Assembly: GCF_006345805.1 (NCBI RefSeq)
Contig: NC_043006.1
Coordinates: 2,480,001-2,544,000 of the forward strand
Reading direction: 5' to 3'
From: Octopus sinensis
Lineage: Eukaryota
DNA length: 64,000 nt
Shown here: positions 4,534 to 64,000 of the stretch, piece by piece
How the letters are laid out: every line of letters starts with the position of its first letter
Position numbering within the stretch: position 1 is the stretch's first letter
The notes under the pieces: generated by a model
The model's input: the letters and a program-made list of their open reading frames with translations, nothing else
Database searches by the model: none
Told to the model about the DNA's origin: nothing
Program-made: the position numbers and the translations under genes

Positions 4534-4669
4534 CAGCAATAATCGTCCTGAGATCTCTTATACACGTACAGTGTTAGATATTCGTCCAGTAGCAAGTACC
4601 CAATGGCATCAGCACACTTTGAGAGAATCTGTAGTCACTGATTTAGGAAAACAGTAATTGGAAATTATT

Positions 4670-4890
4670 TACATTCGACGAATATTTGTCCTCATCTCGT
4701 TTGTTAACACAACATTTCGGCTGTTATACCCTCCAGCCTTCTTCAGGTGTCTTGGGGAAATTTCGAAACTAGGTTCTCATTCTTAAGGTATTTTTCGATA
4801 TTATTATTATTATTGTTGTTGTTGTTATTGTTCAGGTCACTGCTTGGGATCGAACTCGGAATCTTGGGGTTAGTTGCAATCTGTGTGCCC
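4670..4890 (-). mobile_element. Short element 'D': tRNA-like head + (AAC/AAT)n + hammerhead-like tail
   Basis: Minus strand reads CTAACCCCAAGATTCCGAGTTCGATCCC (B box), CAGTGACCTGA, (AAC/AAT)n, then the hammerhead at 4751-4706. Homologous to 56971-57237 and 63796-63960. Confidence 0.7.
4706..4751 (-). ncRNA. Minimal type I hammerhead ribozyme
   Basis: GACAC - CTGAAGA - A - GGCTG/GAGGGTATAA/CAGCC - GAAA - TGTT - GTGTT. Core intact, 5-bp helix II, 5-bp helix I (one G:U); helix III is a CpG-decayed ACGT. Confidence 0.6.
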
Positions 4891-5019
4891 TACTCAATGT
4901 AGATACGTCGTGGGAAGCTAAATTAACTGCGGTACGGTATCCGACTTGAGATATCCCTTGTACAACCTGTATGGATACATGTGTGCGCGCGCGCGCATGT
5001 CCCCCCCCCCGCCCACACA

Positions 5020-11184: not shown

Positions 11185-12067
11185 AGCGAGAAAGAAGCAA
11201 CAAGAATGGATAGGTTTTTAGTACAATCGTTTCATACAGGACAGGCTTTATTAAAAGTTGCAAAAATTACAGCATATAAACGTGTCCCGTACTCATCAGC
11301 TAAAATACATATGAGTTCTCTAGACATCCTAGTGGTTGAGGCTATACTCATGAAGTAATGTAGATAATTAAGTAACATAAACAGATTTCCAAAGTTCATT
11401 AAAGTTCTTTAAAGATGATGTACAGTCTTATCACAGAATTTTAAAAAAGTTTTAATAGCATCACAGAGAAGGTGATCTAATCCATAGTGCACATATGAAT
11501 TTCCAGAGATATGATGAGGGATTACATCATTGTGTTCAACCATTGATAAATTTATCGCCTGTGAATATGAAATTCCTCTTCATTTCTCTGGAAATTTACA
11601 TCTACACCATTGGAAATTGTGCATCTATACAAAGGATTAATTCACCCTCTCTATAATGCTAATAAGCAGGAATTGAGACCCACCTCGTTGTGATTAACAA
11701 TGGATAAAGGTCTTCTGTGAGTATGTAATCCCTCATCATATCTCTGGAAATTCATATGTGCACTATGGATTAGATCACCTTCTCTGTGATGCTATTAAAA
11801 CTTTTTTAAAATTCTGTGATAAGACTGTACATCATATCTTAAAGAACTTTAATGAACTTTGGAAATCTGTTTATGTTACTTAATTATCTACATTACTTCA
11901 TGAGTATAGCCTCAACCACTAGGATGTCTAGAGAACTCACATGTATTTTAGCTGATGAGTACGGGACACGTTTATATGCTGTAATTTTTGCAACTTTTAA
12001 TAAAGCCTGTCCTTGTATGAAACGATTGTACTAAAAACCTATCCATTCTTGTTGCTTCTTTCTCGCT
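11185..12067. mobile_element. Foldback/MITE-like element with ~343-bp near-perfect inverted arms and ~195-bp spacer
   Basis: Arm 11185-11527 is the reverse complement of 11723-12067, with only about 3 small differences seen; termini AGCGAGAAAG...CTTTCTCGCT in TA context. Confidence 0.8.
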
Positions 12068-28734: not shown

Positions 28735-29413
28735 TCCTTGATAGTGACTACCACCAAATTTAGATTGATGGTAGTTTCAAGGATATGACTACAATTAACA
28801 TGCTTATGGATTTATTGAAATGGACTTGAATGCCATTGGTATAAAACTGCCAGAGCCATTTTTCAGAATGCAATAGAAAAGACCTTCAAAGATATAATAA
28901 CGTCATTGAAGGATAGAATAAAATAGCTTATCTGTATAATGTCTGAGTGCAATTGTGGATGGACTGAACTTAATGTCAAAATTGTATTGCATTACTTTGC
29001 TTGAATGTCTCTCACTTGAGAAGAATGAATATTAATCAAGGCTAAGGTATATTTTTTGGATAATCTATCTAAAGGAAGATGCTTCTCAGATCAATGCCCA
29101 GAAAATATAAGATATTTTATCCAGCTGCTAATAAGAGAAAGGGTTGGAGTACATTTTTTTTTATTAATGATAGGTTGGTTTTTATGGTTGTTATTTACCA
29201 AAGTAGTTAGAAATAATCGATTCATTTGCAAATTTGCACAAAAAAATGCTGGGGAAATGTTCAGCAAATAGCGTTTGATAATATAAAAAGGACTTTTGCT
29301 GAGAGTCCTGTTGTGCATTTTTTCATTACCAATATAGATTCCACTTTGACTATTGATACTAGTGAACATGCTATGTCAGGTATCTTATCACAGAATGAGC
29401 CAATGCTATATGT
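28735..29413 (+). pseudogene. Ty3/Gypsy reverse transcriptase-RNase H remnant
   Basis: DSDYHQI*IDGSFKDMTTIN..W..MP(F)GIKTARAIFQ (RT) and QQIAFDNIKRTFAESPVV..LTIDTSEHAMSGILSQ (RNase H DAS motif); ends at a SINE E insertion. Confidence 0.75.
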
Positions 29414-29655
29414 GGAAGCGCGTGGCTTAGTGGTTAGGGTGTCAGACTCATGATTGTAAGATTGTGGTTTTGATTCCTGGATTGGGTGATGCTTTGTGTT
29501 CCTGAGCGAAATGACTTCCTTTCACATTGCTCCAGTCCACTCAACTGGCAAAAACGTGAGTAATCCTGTGACGAACCAGGTGGAAAATATATCTGCCATG
29601 AAACCAGGAAACCAGTGCCTATGAGTTGCCATGACTCAAGAAGGTAACTTTACCA
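29414..29655 (+). mobile_element. SINE family E (tRNA head + CORE-like domain)
   Basis: GCGTGGCTTAGTGGTTAGGGTGTC (A box), TTCACATTGCTCCAGTCCACTCA; homologous to 54527 and 55862. Confidence 0.8.
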
Positions 29656-39130: not shown

Positions 39131-39399
39131 CTGATTTCAGGTCACTGAGCAAACTATGAAGAAAGAAAAAGCTTTCAGCTTCAAAATACATTTGGATGTT
39201 TCAGCCTTGAAATGCTTATGGGAAGTTAATCTAGGACAGCCCCATTCCAGTATGAAGTGAACCTAAATGTTGCACAAAGACCTGATTATTGAAAAACATC
39301 TGGTTCTGGGGAATATGAAGATCATCAGTGGTTGTGACTGAACCCTCAAATCTGCAGAGTTCTGGCTGTGTTTAACCAGGAACCGTGAAAATATGTCTT

Positions 39400-50482: not shown

Positions 50483-51224
50483 ATATTTGGTCCTTCTTCA
50501 GTTCCGTGCTGCCAGTTTATATGGTTTTGAAAATATACTCTAAGTAATGTGGTTGCAGTTGGGATGTGTCTCAGCTCCAAAGTCTCCATTCTGTCTTTCG
50601 AGAGAGTTTGTTGTCAGTGGAGGGCATTTTTGTTTCTCTCACTATTTGTTTCTAATGTTGAGTTTAAAAGTTGGTCTTTGTTATCTTTCATACATTACAC
50701 CATCAATCCATACACACACAGCCACATACACTCACACACGCACACGAACACACACACATACAGTACACATACATACACGGAGGGATAGTACTCCTACCCA
50801 TCTCTCTCATCTATCTATTTCTAGCCTTTCTGCTGTCATTATTTCCTATGTTAGCCCTCTCCTTTTCCATATGCCTTTGAGTTACTGATTACTTTATTGT
50901 TCATGCCTTGAGGAACTACAACCAATAAGGAGTTGGGGATAGGAAGAGTATCTAACTGTAGTAACATGGTCAAGATGACACATATGAGCAACAGTATTTA
51001 TTTGGAAGTAACTCTCAATGAGATAAGATGCTATGATAACCCATCAAACCCATACCAGCATGGAAAGTGGACCTAAAGTGATGATGCTGATGAACAGGAA
51101 CTAGGTAGTCATGCTCCTACTGGGGAATGTTTTTGAGATCTCATTTCATGGAAGCAATGCTGGGTTTGGTATGTGGAAAGAGTGGAAAAGCATATCATCG
51201 GCATATTATGAAAAAGAGTTGTCG

Positions 51225-52001
51225 GCGAGCTGGCAGAAACGTTAGCATGCCGGGCGAAATTCTTAGTGGTATTTCGTCTGCCGTTATGTTCTGAGTTCAA
51301 ATTCCGCCGAGGTCAACTTTGCCTTTCATCCTTTCGGGGTCGATAAATTAAGTACCAGTTATGCACTGGGATCGATGTAATCGACTTAATCCGTTTGTCT
51401 GTCCTTGTTTGTCCCTCAGTGTTTAGCCCCTTGTGGGCAATAAAGAAATAGGTTTTTCGTCTGCCGTTATGTTCTGAGTTCAAATTCCGCCGAGGTCAAC
51501 TTTGCCTTTCATCCTTTCGGGGTCGATAAATTAAGTACCAGTTATGCACTGGGGTCGATGTAATCGACTTAATCCGTTTGTCTGTCCTTGTTTGTCCCTC
51601 TGTGTTTAGCCCCTTGTGGGCAATAAAGAAATAGGTTTTTCGTCTGCTGTTATGTTCTGAGTTCAAATTCCGCCAAGGTCGACTTTGCCTTTCATCCTTT
51701 CGGGGTCGATAAATTAAGTACCAGTTATGCACTGGGGTCGATGTAATCGACTTAATCCGTTTGTCTCTCCTTGTTTGTCCCCTCTGTGTTCAGCCCCTTG
51801 TGGGCAATAAAGAAATAGGTTTTTCGTCTGCTGTTATGTTCTGAGTTCAAATTCCGCCAAGGTCGACTTTGCCTTTCATCCTTTCGGGGTCGATAAATTA
51901 AGTACCAGTTATGCACTGGGGTCGATGTAATTGACTTAATCCGTTTGTCTATCCTTGTTTGTCCCCTCTGTGTTTAGCCCCTTGTGGGCAATAAAGAAAT
52001 A
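51225..52001 (+). repeat. Tandem tetramer of SINE B, ~183-bp period
   Basis: One full head, then units restarting at 51451, 51634 and 51818, each ending AAAGAAATA. Confidence 0.92.
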
Positions 52002-56307: not shown

Positions 56308-56970
56308 TATATATGTATGTATATGTATATATACACACATGGTGTCAAATTAGTTCAGTTGTTAGTGTCAGAGAGTGTGCCTTATAGTATTTGTTCCCAT
56401 AGGCTCAAAAACAAGGGTTGCAAGGAGTGCAGGTGCACCCCTAACATTTGTGTATGAGGGGCCAATGAAAATACTTTGAACATCCTGGGTTGGATCTGGG
56501 TTTGCACTCCCTTAGCAAATTCTGTTTCTGCACTCATGTTTGTTCCGGCTCTCTTCATTCTGACTTTAATTTCTACTTAAACCAGCTTTGGCCTTTGAAT
56601 TCTCTTGGGTTCATAATTGAAGTACTTGTCGATGATAGATTGATGTAATGTTTGAGTATCATAAAAAAAAATGTAATGAAGTCTTTATTTCAGCTTTGTT
56701 CATTCTGGGTTCAAGTTATACCTACCTCCAGCAAAGGCTGTAACAGATATGAGAAGTTCTTGAGCAAGGATCCAAATGCTTCATCATAACACTCTCAATA
56801 GCTGACAATAAGAAACGCAAGCGGATATTTTACATCCTGTTCACTCAACGAGCAATATACATACATACACACATAGATACATATGTATGAATGTGTATCT
56901 TTTATTATTTTTCTTTTACTCGTCTTAGTCATTAGACTGTGGCCATGCTGGAGTATAGGCTTATATGTTC

Positions 56971-57237
56971 TAAAATTCACTCTATAATTGTCCATGAGCA
57001 TATAGCATAGCTCAATCCCAGGCAGGGACTTGAAAAATAATATCAATTGAAAAATAACATCAGCAACATACCCTAGGAATGAGAATAGTGTACCCCATTA
57101 GTCAAATAAAGGATAGGTTCAAAATTCCACCAGAACACCTGAGGAAGGCTGGAGAGTACATCAGCCGAAACATTGTGATAACGACAAACAAAATGGGGAC
57201 ACCTCTCCGTCCATTGTAAATAATGTACATAATTCCT
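56971..57237 (+). mobile_element. Element 'D' copy: Penelope 3' sequence + deleted tRNA-like head + hammerhead
   Basis: 56971-57010 TAAAATTCACTCTATAATTGTCCATGAGCATATAGCATAG matches 63796-63835; 57060-57237 matches the reverse complement of 4670-4800. Confidence 0.7.
57134..57179 (+). ncRNA. Minimal type I hammerhead ribozyme
   Basis: AACAC - CTGAGGA - A - GGCTG/GAGAGTACAT/CAGCC - GAAA - CATT - GTGAT. Confidence 0.55.
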
Positions 57238-61632: not shown

Positions 61633-63760
61633 TTGAATATAATGACACCAGTGGATTCATATAAAACTAAAAGAGTAGCAGAAAGGGCAGGACATGCCCT
61701 CATCCATTACAACCGTTGGAAAAAACATCAACTAAATAACGAAATCAAAGAGAGGTTATCTTCATTACTTAGGAAAATAACCAGAGATGAGGATAGAAAG
61801 AGAAAGATCCAACAAGATCTAGAAAAGTCGAACATGAAAGAATTTGAAATAGTGAAAACACGTCAGATTAGGAAGTTTATGAATGTCAGAGAATGAAGAC
61901 TGAAATCCGTCACCCAACTGTGAAAGCAGTAGTTAATGTAAGTAACCGACATCTAGAAAGCTCTGAAGAGGCAGTACTAAACAAAGGTCTCAACTTTGTA
62001 ACAACCATCAAGTGCATTCCATACTTGGACATAATAGCTTCTATTGAAGAGGTGGCCATAAACATATCAAAAGCTCAGGGAGATGAACTAAGGTGGAAAG
62101 TGAGACAGGTACTAGAAAAAGTGAAAAGTTTGCTCTCAAAAGACTACAGAGTGACAATTCCATCATAATACTTCTGGCAGACAAAGGAAATGCTACAGTG
62201 GTGATGAACAAGTCTGACTACTCGGAAAAATTGGCAAGTTTTATATGTGATGGTAACTAAAGAAAGACCCAACTCTGAAAACAGAGAGGAAGCTGTCACA
62301 GATCTTGATCAAGAACAAGGATCACTTTACACCCATGAAGTACAGACAACTGACTCAACATCACAGAAAACTACCACACACGTACGATCTCCCTAAGATT
62401 CACAAGGATAGTATTCCATTAAGACTTATAGTGAGCTGTAGAGGTTCAGCATGTCATCCACTGAGCCGCTTCCTTGTGGATATAATCAGTCCATTAGCAG
62501 GAACTCTTCATCGTACGCGAAGAATTCCACCCACTTCACAGAATTGATCAAGGATACGCCCATTGAATCGAACCAGATGGTGAGTCTAGATGTTGTAAGT
62601 TTATTCACCAAAGTTGCAACTGGTGAAGCACTATCGGTGATACAAGGAAAACTAGTGACAGACCTCCATCTAAAAGAACGCACTAGTATACCAATAAGAA
62701 ACTTGATGGAAATGTTGACCTTCTGTGTAGAAACTACCTACTTCAGTATGGACACTGATATATATCGACAAGAGGAGGGTTTAGCTATGGGTTCGCCATT
62801 ATCACTGGTAATAGCCAATATATACATGGAATACTTTGAGAGTTTGGCTTTAGGATCAACACCACTAAAACTAACCCTATGGCTGTGATATGTTGATGAC
62901 ACCTTTATACTCTGGCCCCACCAGGAAGATGTCCAAGTGCTGTTAGATCATGTGAACTCAATAAAGCCATCCATACAGTTCACAATGGAAAAAGGAAAAA
63001 GATAATCAGCTGGCATTCCTGGGTGTATTAATAACAAGCACCAAGTATGGATTCAAGACATCTGTATACTGCAAGCTGACTTTCACTGGACAATACCTCA
63101 ACTTCAATTCCCACCATCCATACAGTGTAAAGGGAAGGATTGCTCGGTGCTTAAAACATCGAGCAAAGAATATATGTAGTGATCGTGATACACACCACGA
63201 AGAAATGGTCAAGCTCAGTAACAGTCTGTTAAGCAACAACTACCCCCAAAACATACTCTCCACTCCAGTTATGAAGAAGAGAGAGGATGAGGCCAAAAAA
63301 CTGTCCACAGTCTGTCTACCCTATGTGAAAGGCCTCTCAGAAAAGATACAAAAGATATGTGGCCCATATGACATTAGAACAGTATTCAAGAGTAATACAG
63401 CACTTTGCAAATCTCTCCTTCGAGTAAAACCACCAATAGAAGAGAATATGACCAAAAACTGCATGTACTCCATCCCATGCAGCTGTGGTAGGTTATACAA
63501 AGGTGAAACATGCTACCCCCTCAAAATAGGGGTAGAGGAACATTGCAAAGCTATGACATGAGGAGATATTGATAAATTGGGTATAGCTGATCATATGTGG
63601 TAAAATGGAGACCACCTTCCCCTGTGGGATGAAGTTAAAATAATAGACAGAGAACACCACTGGAAAATACGAAAACTAAAAGAAGCAGCACATATGCTAG
63701 GACAACAACCTCCTTAGCAGACCGAGTGCAGATATGAGTAGCATATGGGAACCGGTGTTA
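61633..63760 (+). mobile_element. Penelope-like retroelement (RT + C-terminal GIY-YIG), pseudogenised
   Basis: VVNVSNRHL..EEAVLNKGLNF; YDLPKIHK..LRLIVS; SLDVVSLFTKV; GLAMGSPLS..IANIYME; WL*YVDDTF; LPYVKGLSEKI; CMYSIPCSCGRLYKGET; WDEVKIIDREHHWKIRKLKEA. Multiple stops and frameshifts. Confidence 0.92.
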
Positions 63761-63795
63761 AGGGTGGATAGGAAAATATTAGATTTTATAAGCCC

Positions 63796-63960
63796 TAAAA
63801 TTCACTCCATAATTGCCCATGGGCATATAGCATAGTGGTTAAGAGTGCGGACTACTAACCCTAAGATTCCAAGTTTGATTCCATTCAGTGACCTGAATAG
63901 TAATAATAATAATAATAATTATAGTAATAATAATAATAATAATCATAATAATAATAATAA
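63796..63960 (+). other. Penelope 3' region containing a tRNA-like Pol III head and (AAT)n
   Basis: A box TAGCATAGTGG (63828-63838), degenerate B box AGTTTGATTCC (63872-63882), CAGTGACCTGA, (AAT)n to 63960. Confidence 0.65.
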
Positions 63961-63965
63961 TCATA

Positions 63966-64000
63966 TCTATATATATAAAACTCTAGTTGTGTGAGTGTCT
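63966..64000 (+). mobile_element. 5' end of a Helitron, truncated by the window edge
   Basis: A|TCTATATATATAAAACTCTAGTTGTGTG resembles the 5' end at 60920. Confidence 0.6.

What the first reader, a model, noticed from the sequence alone, without database searches (positions are those of the whole stretch)
63796..63960. Penelope element appears to carry a tRNA-derived Pol III cassette feeding into a hammerhead ribozyme
Seen: right after the GIY-YIG ORF come an A box, a B box, CAGTGACCTGA and (AAT)n. The same head is found at 4890-4830 (minus) and 56995-57030, and there it continues into an intact CUGANGA...GAAA hammerhead core. The 57-kb copy also shares about 25 bp upstream of the head with the Penelope 3' region, which suggests the head is part of the element and not a chance SINE insertion. 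Established: Penelope-like elements carry minimal type I hammerheads in their terminal repeats. Inference: this family may have captured a tRNA/SINE promoter upstream of its ribozyme, giving a ~200-nt Pol III RNA whose 3' end is made by self-cleavage and which could spawn Penelope-mobilised SINE-like copies. I do not recall such a cassette being described, but have not searched the literature.
Basis: partly seen in the sequence, partly recalled or inferred. Interest (0 to 1): 0.8.

Follow-up and report, generated by a model that had tools for sequence, protein, structure and literature searches.

The report
tRNA-like promoter module in cephalopod Penelope retrotransposons
The tRNA-like stretch after the Penelope gene is an inherited part of the element's 3' end in octopus and cuttlefish, sitting upstream of its small hammerhead ribozyme; this layout was previously described only in schistosome SINEs and may show how ribozyme-bearing SINEs arise.

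Summary
At 63795-63960, just after the decayed Penelope-like (PLE) reading frame, lie:
- a conserved leader;
- a perfect A box (63828-63838);
- a B box 33 nt later (63872-63882);
- CAGTGACCTGA;
- (AAT)n.

The two other window copies (56956-57237 on +, 4901-4652 on -) continue into a PLE-type minimal hammerhead. My descriptor finds only these two in the window and none in 60 simulated sequences.

Related loci settle the main question. Two independent copies of the same PLE family in Octopus sinensis have the same junction of reading frame, leader and head. Two further PLE lineages carry the homologous module. One is an intact, transcribed element in cuttlefish (Sepia esculenta) RNA-seq. Two more distant PLEs have the hammerhead but no A/B boxes.

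So the head is an ancient, inherited part of a coleoid PLE 3' module, not a chance SINE insertion.

Not shown:
- Pol III transcription.
- A self-cleaved 3' end; the ribozyme type needs dimers, and all copies run about 65 nt past the cleavage site.
- A derived SINE family; the 5' ends of copies without the reading frame are scattered.
- tRNA descent by model; neither tRNA model recognises the head.

A tRNA-type head plus hammerhead is already known in schistosome Sm-alpha SINEs. Verdict: new variant of a known kind, moderately interesting.

The parts
61633..63791 (+). Decayed Penelope-like element reading frame (reverse transcriptase, then a GIY-YIG-type endonuclease motif YSIPCSCGRLYKGET, then the C-terminal LLSRPSADMSSIWEPVL). 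It carries several frameshifts and stops. The ancestral stop codon TAA is at 63789-63791, put out of frame here by a 1-nt insertion.
   Evidence: Three-frame translation and ORF list. Pfam RVT_1 E=6e-9. 336 homologues with E<=1e-10, including an Octopus sinensis protein at 71% identity. 85.7% DNA identity over 1620 bp to the O. sinensis copy. Stop codon inferred from L001b, which reads ...ILDL*.
63784..63821 (+). T/A-rich TATA-like element (TTTTATAA, overlapping the stop codon) followed by a ~30-nt leader. The leader is conserved in three PLE lineages.
   Evidence: Alignments. Consensus TTAGRTTTATAAGYCCYAAAAATTC....ATTGYCCA in the window copy, L001a, L001b, the 57-kb copy, L002, L004, L006 and L007.
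63815..63896 (+). tRNA-like head: A box 63828-63838, anticodon-loop-like CTACTAA 63852-63858, B box 63872-63882, acceptor-3'-like CAGTGACCTGA 63886-63896.
   Evidence: Spacing of 33 nt between the boxes. The head is ~70% similar to the head of an unrelated tRNA-type SINE at window 29410-29490 (local score 21 against 7.5+-1.4 for shuffles). No cloverleaf is found by ARAGORN or Rfam.
63897..63960 (+). Internal microsatellite, imperfect (AAT)n. It is present at the same place in every copy: (AAT/AAC)n in octopus and (GCA)n-like in the cuttlefish-type lineage.
63961..64000 (+). Break. The sequence no longer follows the module, which should continue ATCGAAAAATACC... The body, hammerhead and tail of this copy are not in the window.
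   Evidence: One search compared. This stretch is not repeated in the window or in the loci.
56956..57237 (+). Copy of the 3' module without the reading frame. It starts at the stop codon and leader (leader 56970-56996). Its head has a ~32-nt internal deletion. The minimal hammerhead is at 57136-57177, with the predicted cleavage between 57174 and 57175. The common element end ...GTAAATAATGTACATAATTCCT is at 57216-57237.
   Evidence: nhmmer E=6e-53.
4652..4901 (-). Copy of the module without the reading frame. It begins at about the start of the head (model position 48). B box region GAGTTCGATCCC at 4857-4846, CAGTGACCTGA at 4842-4832, then (AAC/AAT)n. The minimal hammerhead is at 4751-4706, with the predicted cleavage between 4711 and 4710. 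The tail ends near 4660.
   Evidence: nhmmer E=3e-58.

Best explanation
What it is: the finding is the first half of the 3'-terminal non-coding module of a Penelope-like retrotransposon lineage of coleoid cephalopods.

Order of the full module:
1. Stop codon overlapping a TATA-like element.
2. A ~30-nt conserved leader.
3. A ~80-nt tRNA-like segment with SINE-type A and B boxes.
4. A microsatellite.
5. A ~90-nt body.
6. A PLE-type minimal (dimer-dependent) type I hammerhead.
7. A tail of about 65 nt that ends the element.

Shown:
- The tRNA-like segment is an inherited, integral part of the element. It occupies the same place in independent copies, in three PLE lineages, and in both octopus and cuttlefish.
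- It is absent from more distant PLEs that do have the hammerhead.

Inferred origin: it entered once, most likely by insertion of, or template switching onto, a tRNA-derived SINE. A SINE with a ~70% similar head lies in the same window, and the microsatellite looks like that SINE's tail.

Inferred function, my commitment at about 45-50%:
- In intact copies the A and B boxes work as a type-2 internal Pol III promoter.
- That promoter would make short head-to-tail RNAs that end with the PLE's own 3' terminus.
- The PLE reverse transcriptase can therefore copy them in trans. Even 5'-truncated dead copies would remain potential source genes.
- The hammerhead does what it is thought to do in other PLEs: as a dimer it processes multi-copy or read-through transcripts. 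It does not set the 3' end of a monomeric Pol III RNA.

The window copy itself is a dead, interrupted relic.
For: Integral part of the element:
- The junction is identical in window 63.8k, L001a and L001b, which are Octopus sinensis copies at different loci.
- The PLE bodies are 85.7% identical over 1620 bp.
- A homologous leader, boxes, microsatellite and tail occur in L002 and L007, with the hammerhead region damaged in each (G12 to A in L002, CUGANGA box deleted in L007). The partial copy L004 shows only the leader, boxes and start of the microsatellite.
- L004 is a transcript contig from Sepia esculenta RNA-seq with an intact reading frame.

Lineage-specific: PLEs at ~40% protein identity (L008, L009) have textbook minimal hammerheads 250-290 nt after the reading frame but no A/B boxes.

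Promoter signature:
- Perfect A boxes: TAGCATAGTGG in the window and TGGCGTAGTGG in L001b.
- Good B boxes, with spacings of 33, 44 and 53 nt in the three lineages.
- The boxes stay recognisable while the sequence between them barely aligns and changes length.
- An anticodon-loop-like heptamer sits at tRNA positions 32-38.
- No TTTT run occurs inside L001a or the 4.8-kb copy.
- One copy without the reading frame (4.8 kb) starts at the head boundary.

Hammerhead:
- It is specific: 2 hits against 0 in simulations.
- Helix II is 96.7% paired, with two compensatory double changes.
Against: - There is no expression evidence for a short Pol III RNA. The only transcript evidence joins the reading frame and the head on one RNA.
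- The head does not fold as a tRNA by ARAGORN, even with relaxed thresholds, or by the Rfam tRNA model. 'tRNA-derived' therefore rests on the boxes, their spacing, the loop-like heptamer and similarity to a SINE head.
- Six copies without the reading frame have six different 5' ends, as ordinary 5' truncation would give. No abundant head-started family was seen in about 180 kb.
- Several copies have lost a box: the B box is deleted in L001a, and part of the A box is deleted in the 57-kb copy.
- A retroelement passes on whatever its master copy carries, so persistence alone does not prove function.
- A conserved TATA-like element ~37 nt upstream of the A box would also fit a Pol II start.
Confidence: 0.55

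Rival explanations
1. Inert passenger. A SINE, or a template-switch product, was captured in the 3' UTR of an ancestral PLE. It has been carried along ever since without acting as a promoter, and the A/B boxes are simply the slowest-decaying remnants.
For: - No tRNA fold remains.
- Boxes are lost in individual copies.
- The 5' ends of copies without the reading frame are scattered.
- The cuttlefish transcript shows only co-transcription with the reading frame.
Against: - The boxes remain near consensus in three lineages whose proteins are only 60-65% identical, while the sequence between the boxes has changed in length (33, 44 and 53 nt) and barely aligns.
- The best boxes are in the least decayed copies: L001b, L004 (intact reading frame) and L007.
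Confidence: 0.28
2. Pol II promoter and leader of the terminal repeat. The conserved TATA-like element and leader would drive Pol II transcription that starts near the head. In tandem or partial-tandem copies the ribozyme would then trim the 5' end. The tRNA-like stretch would be merely the 5' leader, or a TFIIIC-binding or boundary site.
For: - PLE terminal repeats are known to hold the element's promoter upstream of the hammerhead (PMC6765202, citing Schostak 2008).
- TTTATAAG is conserved ~37 nt upstream of the A box in three lineages.
- The 4.8-kb copy starts about 25-30 nt downstream of where that element would lie.
- Pol III could not transcribe a reading frame of over 2 kb.
Against: - In the octopus family the TATA-like element overlaps the stop codon, and in the P0001 lineage it is degenerate (TTTAATAG).
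- No direct tandem (terminal-repeat) arrangement was seen in any locus examined. Only inverted truncated partners were found.
- This reading does not explain why A and B boxes are kept at tRNA-like spacing.
Confidence: 0.12
3. Chance adjacency. An ordinary SINE happened to insert next to this particular Penelope copy, and the hammerhead-like motifs elsewhere are chance matches.
For: The window is full of SINEs, and an unrelated SINE at 29.4 kb has a similar head.
Against: - The same junction is seen at independent loci and in other lineages and species.
- The hammerhead descriptor gives 0 hits in 60 simulations, and helix II covaries.
Confidence: 0.02

Closest known systems
Minimal type I hammerheads in the terminal repeats of Penelope-like elements (Cervera & de la Pena 2014, PMC4209133; Lunse, Weinberg & Breaker 2017)
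   Same: - Autonomous element with reverse transcriptase and endonuclease.
- Ribozyme in the 3'/terminal region.
- CUGANGA plus one extra nucleotide, then helix II opening with G10.1-C11.1.
- GAAA followed by a palindromic CG, then U-H.
- No helix III, and a short helix I.
- Inverted 5'-truncated partner copies.
   Different: A tRNA-like A/B-box segment and a microsatellite lie between the reading frame and the ribozyme. The two distant PLEs checked here (L008, L009) lack them, and I found no paper that mentions them.
Sm-alpha / Sj-alpha SINE-like retroposons of Schistosoma (Ferbeyre 1998; Laha 2000; summarised in PMC6765202 and PMC2770079)
   Same: A tRNA-derived head with a Pol III promoter, followed on the same ~200-350-nt unit by a type I hammerhead.
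   Different: - Sm-alpha is non-autonomous, derived from tRNA-Gln, and still recognised by tRNAscan.
- It carries a canonical hammerhead with loop-loop contacts and occurs in tandem arrays at more than 10,000 copies.
- Here the cassette sits inside the autonomous element, the ribozyme is the minimal dimeric type, the head is no longer recognisable as a tRNA, and no tandem arrays were seen.
Metazoan non-LTR retrozymes (PMC7229834; bioRxiv 10.64898/2026.07.22.740005)
   Same: Short non-coding units with type I hammerheads that are related to PLE terminal repeats and are thought to be mobilised by PLEs.
   Different: Retrozymes are tandem repeats with a ribozyme in every unit and are expressed as circular RNAs. 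No Pol III-type head is reported for them, and the copies here are dispersed single units.
TRIMp3 elements: Cassandra, Helenus, Ajax (Kojima 2024, PMC10886601)
   Same: [quoted passage not shown]
   Different: Those are non-autonomous LTR elements with a primer-binding site and polypurine tract. Kojima argues that their autonomous partners should not share the Pol III part. Here the boxes are in the autonomous, non-LTR-type element itself and are coupled to a ribozyme.
Ordinary tRNA-derived SINEs with a tail borrowed from a partner LINE (SINE2)
   Same: A head with A and B boxes plus a 3' end identical to that of the autonomous partner.
   Different: In SINE2 the head is not part of the partner element. 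Here the partner carries head and tail contiguously, so no separate recombination event is needed to make a SINE.

Membership tests
Penelope-like element with endonuclease (Penelope/Poseidon type) | Reverse transcriptase domain | tested here: met
   Pfam RVT_1 E=6e-9 on the frame-corrected translation. Hundreds of homologues carry RVT_1.
Penelope-like element with endonuclease (Penelope/Poseidon type) | C-terminal GIY-YIG endonuclease | tested here: inconclusive
   The motif ..NCMYSIPCSCGRLYKGET..R..EEH.. is visible and conserved in homologues. No Pfam GIY-YIG hit even at E<=1, and no PDB hit with a profile. The PLE-specific CDD model is not in these libraries.
Penelope-like element with endonuclease (Penelope/Poseidon type) | Terminal repeats from partial tandems, and/or inverted 5'-truncated partner copies | tested here: inconclusive
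   No direct repeat flanks the window copy. Inverted truncated partners abut PLE copies in L001, L002, L005 and L006, as described for PLEs in PMC8557442.
PLE-type minimal hammerhead ribozyme | Catalytic core CUGANGA ... GAAA, with U16.1 and H17 at the cleavage site | tested here: met
   Both window copies have the full core. Two other copies keep a near-intact core: L001a has G10.1 changed to A, and L005inv has a G-U at 10.1-11.1.
PLE-type minimal hammerhead ribozyme | Helix II opening with G10.1-C11.1, preceded by one unpaired nucleotide | tested here: met
   A + GGCUG...CAGCC. Helix II is 96.7% paired across six copies, with compensatory changes U-A to C-G and G-C to A-U.
PLE-type minimal hammerhead ribozyme | No helix III; palindromic positions 15.2/16.2 that allow a dimer | tested here: met
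   GAAA-CG-UU in L001a, L002a and L005inv. It has decayed to UG or CA, the two CpG decay products, in the two window copies.
PLE-type minimal hammerhead ribozyme | Self-cleavage, as a dimer | not testable with these tools
   Needs in vitro transcription of monomer and dimer constructs.
Rfam Hammerhead_1 / Hammerhead_3 and related models | Score above the family threshold | tested here: not met
   No hammerhead hit even at E<=10. This is expected for a motif without helix III.
tRNA-derived SINE head (type-2 Pol III internal promoter) | A box and B box near consensus at tRNA-like spacing | tested here: met
   Window 63828/63872 and L001 1455, both with a 33-nt spacing. Spacing is 44 nt in L004 and 53 nt in L007. 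Expectation is 0.1 per 64 kb.
tRNA-derived SINE head (type-2 Pol III internal promoter) | Recognisable descent from a tRNA (cloverleaf or model score) | tested here: not met
   ARAGORN finds nothing at default thresholds or down to 80% of them. At 70% the false-positive rate is 12%. No Rfam tRNA hit at E<=10. What remains is an anticodon-loop-like heptamer at the right position and 70% similarity to another SINE head.
tRNA-derived SINE head (type-2 Pol III internal promoter) | Transcription by RNA polymerase III | not testable with these tools
   No small-RNA or ChIP data are available here.
SINE family mobilised by the PLE | Many short copies that start at the head, with target-site duplications | tested here: inconclusive
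   One of six copies without the reading frame starts at the head boundary. The others start at the leader, inside the B box, in the body, in helix II or in the tail. No clear duplications were found. The sample is far too small.
Non-LTR retrozyme | Tandem array with a hammerhead in each unit | tested here: not met
   All copies are single and dispersed.

The most novel reading that the evidence does not exclude
A whole lineage of autonomous Penelope-like elements in coleoid cephalopods carries a working Pol III promoter in its 3' module. Every copy, including the 5'-truncated majority, would then be a ready-made SINE source gene whose RNA ends in the PLE's own recognition sequence and ribozyme. 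That would be a living intermediate for the origin of hammerhead-bearing SINEs (as in Schistosoma) and of animal retrozymes from PLEs.
Probability: 0.3. Interest if true: 0.75.

Novelty: new variant of a known kind. Interest (0 to 1): 0.55.

Why it matters
Three things are each known separately:
- Hammerhead ribozymes occur in PLE terminal repeats.
- A Pol III head plus a hammerhead occurs in schistosome SINEs.
- Animal retrozymes have been proposed to derive from PLEs.

How the non-autonomous, ribozyme-bearing elements acquire a promoter and a partner has not been shown. An autonomous PLE lineage that already carries a SINE-type promoter next to its ribozyme and 3' end would give a one-step route from autonomous element to SINE.

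It also offers a concrete system to test. Octopus and cuttlefish have genomes and RNA-seq data, and the cuttlefish family has an intact, expressed reading frame.

There is a practical point for annotation too. Repeat pipelines may split this module into a 'SINE/tRNA' call plus a 'Penelope' call.

Tried and rejected
- Rfam at gathering threshold on the whole window, and at E<=10 on five short stretches, found no tRNA or hammerhead family.
- ARAGORN on the window and on loci L001-L007, then with relaxed thresholds on seven head sequences, gave nothing above the false-positive rate of shuffled controls.
- I looked up a window reading frame to try to read past base 64000. It is not on record. The window's own products do not appear among the homologues either, so I made no further attempts.
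- Exact-pattern scans for the hammerhead in JGI metagenome contigs and IMG/VR gave 0 hits.
- Extending the O. sinensis locus to 20.7 kb gave no further copies.
- nhmmer with a module profile gave no new copies beyond those found by BLAST.
- Pfam and PDB profile searches for the GIY-YIG domain gave nothing.
- Helitron claim: the last 27 bases are unique in the window and the loci, so it can be neither confirmed nor refuted.
- I looked for target-site duplications around the 57-kb and 4.8-kb copies and around the head itself. None were convincing.
- I considered and dropped the idea that the CAGTGACCTGA at 39137-39147 (-) is another copy. It lies in an unrelated SINE.
- The identification of the head with a particular tRNA (it resembles tRNA-Thr or tRNA-Met as I remember them) rests on memory only and is not claimed.

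Full report
**What is in the window.** Bases 61633-63791 hold a decayed Penelope-like element (PLE).
- The frame-corrected translation hits Pfam RVT_1.
- It carries the endonuclease-type motif YSIPCSCGRLYKGET and ends with LLSRPSADMSSIWEPVL.
- It has hundreds of homologues, the closest being an Octopus sinensis protein at 71% identity.
- Comparison with a better copy shows that the true stop codon is the TAA at 63789-63791. A 1-nt insertion hides it here.

- a leader at 63795-63821;
- a perfect A box, TAGCATAGTGG, at 63828-63838;
- an anticodon-loop-like CTACTAA at 63852-63858;
- a B box, AGTTTGATTCC, at 63872-63882, 33 nt after the A box;
- CAGTGACCTGA at 63886-63896;
- (AAT)n up to 63960.

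After 63960 the sequence departs from the family.

**The two other window copies.** BLAST, a pattern search and a profile search all find exactly two more copies: 56956-57237 (+) and 4901-4652 (-).
- The 57-kb copy shares about 50 bp (88% identity) with the sequence that precedes the head in the Penelope copy. It therefore starts at the stop codon. Its head has lost ~32 nt internally.
- The 4.8-kb copy starts at about the head boundary.
- Both continue through a microsatellite and a ~90-nt body into CAC-CUGANGA-A-GGCUG...CAGCC-GAAA-NN-UU-GUG, and then ~65 nt further to a common end, ...GTAAATAATGTACATAATTCCT.

**Is the hammerhead real?** Rfam finds no hammerhead even at E<=10. The motif nevertheless fits, point by point, the 'minimal' hammerhead that Cervera and de la Pena defined for PLE terminal repeats (PMC4209133):
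- a G10.1-C11.1 pair;
- no helix III, with a palindromic 15.2/16.2 instead;
- a short helix I.

A descriptor I wrote for this motif finds only these two sites in 64 kb on both strands, and none in 60 simulated sequences.

The two window copies read UG and CA at positions 15.2/16.2. These are the two decay products of CpG, and three related copies (L001a, L002a, L005inv) do read CG.

Across six copies helix II is 96.7% paired. It carries two compensatory double changes: U-A to C-G, and G-C to A-U.

- The locus of the O. sinensis homologue carries a 5'-truncated copy of the same family (85.7% DNA identity over 1620 bp) with the same junction of reading frame, leader and head. Its G10.1 has mutated to A, so it fails my strict descriptor.
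- A second truncated copy 3 kb away has the same junction and the best boxes of all (TGGCGTAGTGG, then 33 nt, then AGTTCGATTCC). Its ribozyme region is partly deleted.
- Next to that copy lies an inverted partner that starts inside the B box. Inverted truncated partners are typical of PLEs (PMC8557442).

**Other lineages and species.** Two other PLE lineages, 60-65% identical in protein, carry the homologous module:
- the P0001/P0002 lineage, with leader, TGGCCGAGGCG ... GAGTTCAATCCC, a (GCA)n-like repeat, a body and a tail, and a hammerhead region with G12 mutated to A in L002;
- the lineage whose proteins end in '...IIKKAR', with TGGCGTAACGG ... GGTTCAATCCT and a hammerhead region whose CUGANGA box is deleted in the copy seen.

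The P0002 locus is a contig assembled from SRR25097168. That run is RNA-seq of Sepia esculenta larvae (PMC10571815). The contig joins an intact 334-residue reading-frame end to the leader and head.

P0002 is 92% identical to P0001 from assembly ERZ21867824. The loci from that assembly contain none of the abundant Octopus SINE, so it is probably a decapodiform genome.

By contrast, two PLEs at ~40% identity have textbook minimal hammerheads 250-290 nt after the reading frame but no A/B boxes. One comes from another ENA assembly and one from a Tara Oceans scaffold.

So the head is a lineage-specific, old and inherited part of a coleoid PLE module. It is not a local accident.

**Is it tRNA-derived, and is it a promoter?**

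Arguments for:
- The A and B boxes are near consensus, and their spacing in the octopus family is the canonical 33 nt.
- The loop-like heptamer sits where the anticodon loop should be.
- The head is ~70% similar to the head of an unrelated tRNA-type SINE at window 29410-29490, which has the same 33-nt spacing.
- Across the three lineages the boxes stay recognisable while the sequence between them changes length (33, 44 and 53 nt) and hardly aligns.

Arguments against:
- Neither ARAGORN, even relaxed, nor the Rfam tRNA model sees a tRNA.
- Individual copies have lost a box.
- The only expression evidence shows the head co-transcribed with the reading frame.

I therefore treat descent from a SINE or tRNA as likely, and promoter function as a plausible but unproven inference.

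**How it most likely works.**

Shown: the anatomy, the inheritance and the ribozyme class.

Inferred:
- In intact copies the boxes can recruit Pol III to make a head-to-tail RNA. That RNA carries the PLE's own 3' end, so the PLE enzyme can copy it in trans.

- This ribozyme class is inactive as a monomer (PMC4209133).
- All copies run ~65 nt past the cleavage site.
- Cleavage would separate the head from the 3' terminus that reverse transcription presumably needs.

The six copies without a reading frame that I could examine start at six different positions, and only one starts at the head. That looks like ordinary 5' truncation, not a head-launched family, although the sample is very small.

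A conserved TATA-like element ~37 nt upstream of the A box keeps a Pol II reading alive.

**Comparison with what is known.**
- The ribozyme and the element are ordinary members of known kinds.
- The combination of a tRNA-type Pol III head with a hammerhead is also known, but in the non-autonomous Sm-alpha/Sj-alpha SINEs of schistosomes (PMC6765202, PMC2770079).
- Small-RNA promoters inside terminal repeats are known for the non-autonomous LTR elements Cassandra, Helenus and Ajax (PMC10886601).
- Animal retrozymes have been linked to PLE terminal repeats (PMC7229834; bioRxiv 10.64898/2026.07.22.740005).

I found no description of such a head inside an autonomous PLE in eight full-text searches and the papers I read. 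Those include the broad PLE survey of Craig et al. 2021, which has no occurrence of 'SINE' and mentions 'tRNA' only once, in the unrelated context of selenocysteine recoding. Repbase and Dfam annotations could not be consulted.

I rate this a new variant of a known kind, of moderate interest. It would rank clearly higher if Pol III transcription and head-started copies were demonstrated.

Noticed in passing
window 51213-51995: One full copy of the abundant Octopus SINE is followed by three further head-to-tail partial units of 183-184 nt (97-100% identical to each other). Each restarts inside the SINE at ...GGTTTTTCGTCTGCCGTTATGTTCTGAGTTC. It is a short tandem array of a SINE fragment.
   Followed up: partly
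window 29410-29640: A tRNA-type SINE with an unrelated body. Its head (TGGCTTAGTGG, then 33 nt, then GTTTTGATTCC) is ~70% similar to the Penelope head. Two more diverged copies exist in the window (76% identity over 227 nt, and 71% over 125 nt). It is a candidate donor family for the captured head.
   Followed up: partly
module body, e.g. window 4778-4766 (-), 57114-57126 (+); L002 4604-4616; L007 11806-11818: A second, very well conserved B-box-like block, (G)GTTCGAAATTYCC, lies ~30 nt upstream of the hammerhead in all lineages. In three lineages it is preceded by AATAAAG, a possible polyadenylation signal. Its role is unknown.
   Followed up: no
window 63784-63791 and homologous positions in L001, L004, L007: A conserved TATA-like element (TTTATAAG) lies ~37 nt upstream of the A box. 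In the octopus family it overlaps the stop codon of the reading frame.
   Followed up: partly
L002 1030-2767 (-) and 2992-4725 (+): Two copies of the cuttlefish-type PLE lie head to head. Their reading-frame fragments are intact and their 3' modules are 98.6% identical, so this is a very recent inverted pair.
   Followed up: no
window 11238-11412 and 11839-12013: 175-nt inverted repeats, 99% complementary and 426 nt apart. This looks like a young foldback or MITE-like element.
   Followed up: no
L009 (Tara Oceans metagenome scaffold TARA_SAMEA6029349, 5287 nt): A complete-looking animal PLE sits in a marine 'metagenome' scaffold. Identical minimal hammerheads (CTGATGAAGACCTACGTGGTCGAAA) occur before and after the reading frame, and once more in inverted orientation. 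This shows the classic terminal-repeat arrangement that the cephalopod loci did not show.
   Followed up: partly
window 56880-56960: The 57-kb module copy abuts a truncated copy of another Octopus SINE (...GTCATTAGACTGTGGCCATGCTGGAG) with no recognisable target-site duplication.
   Followed up: no
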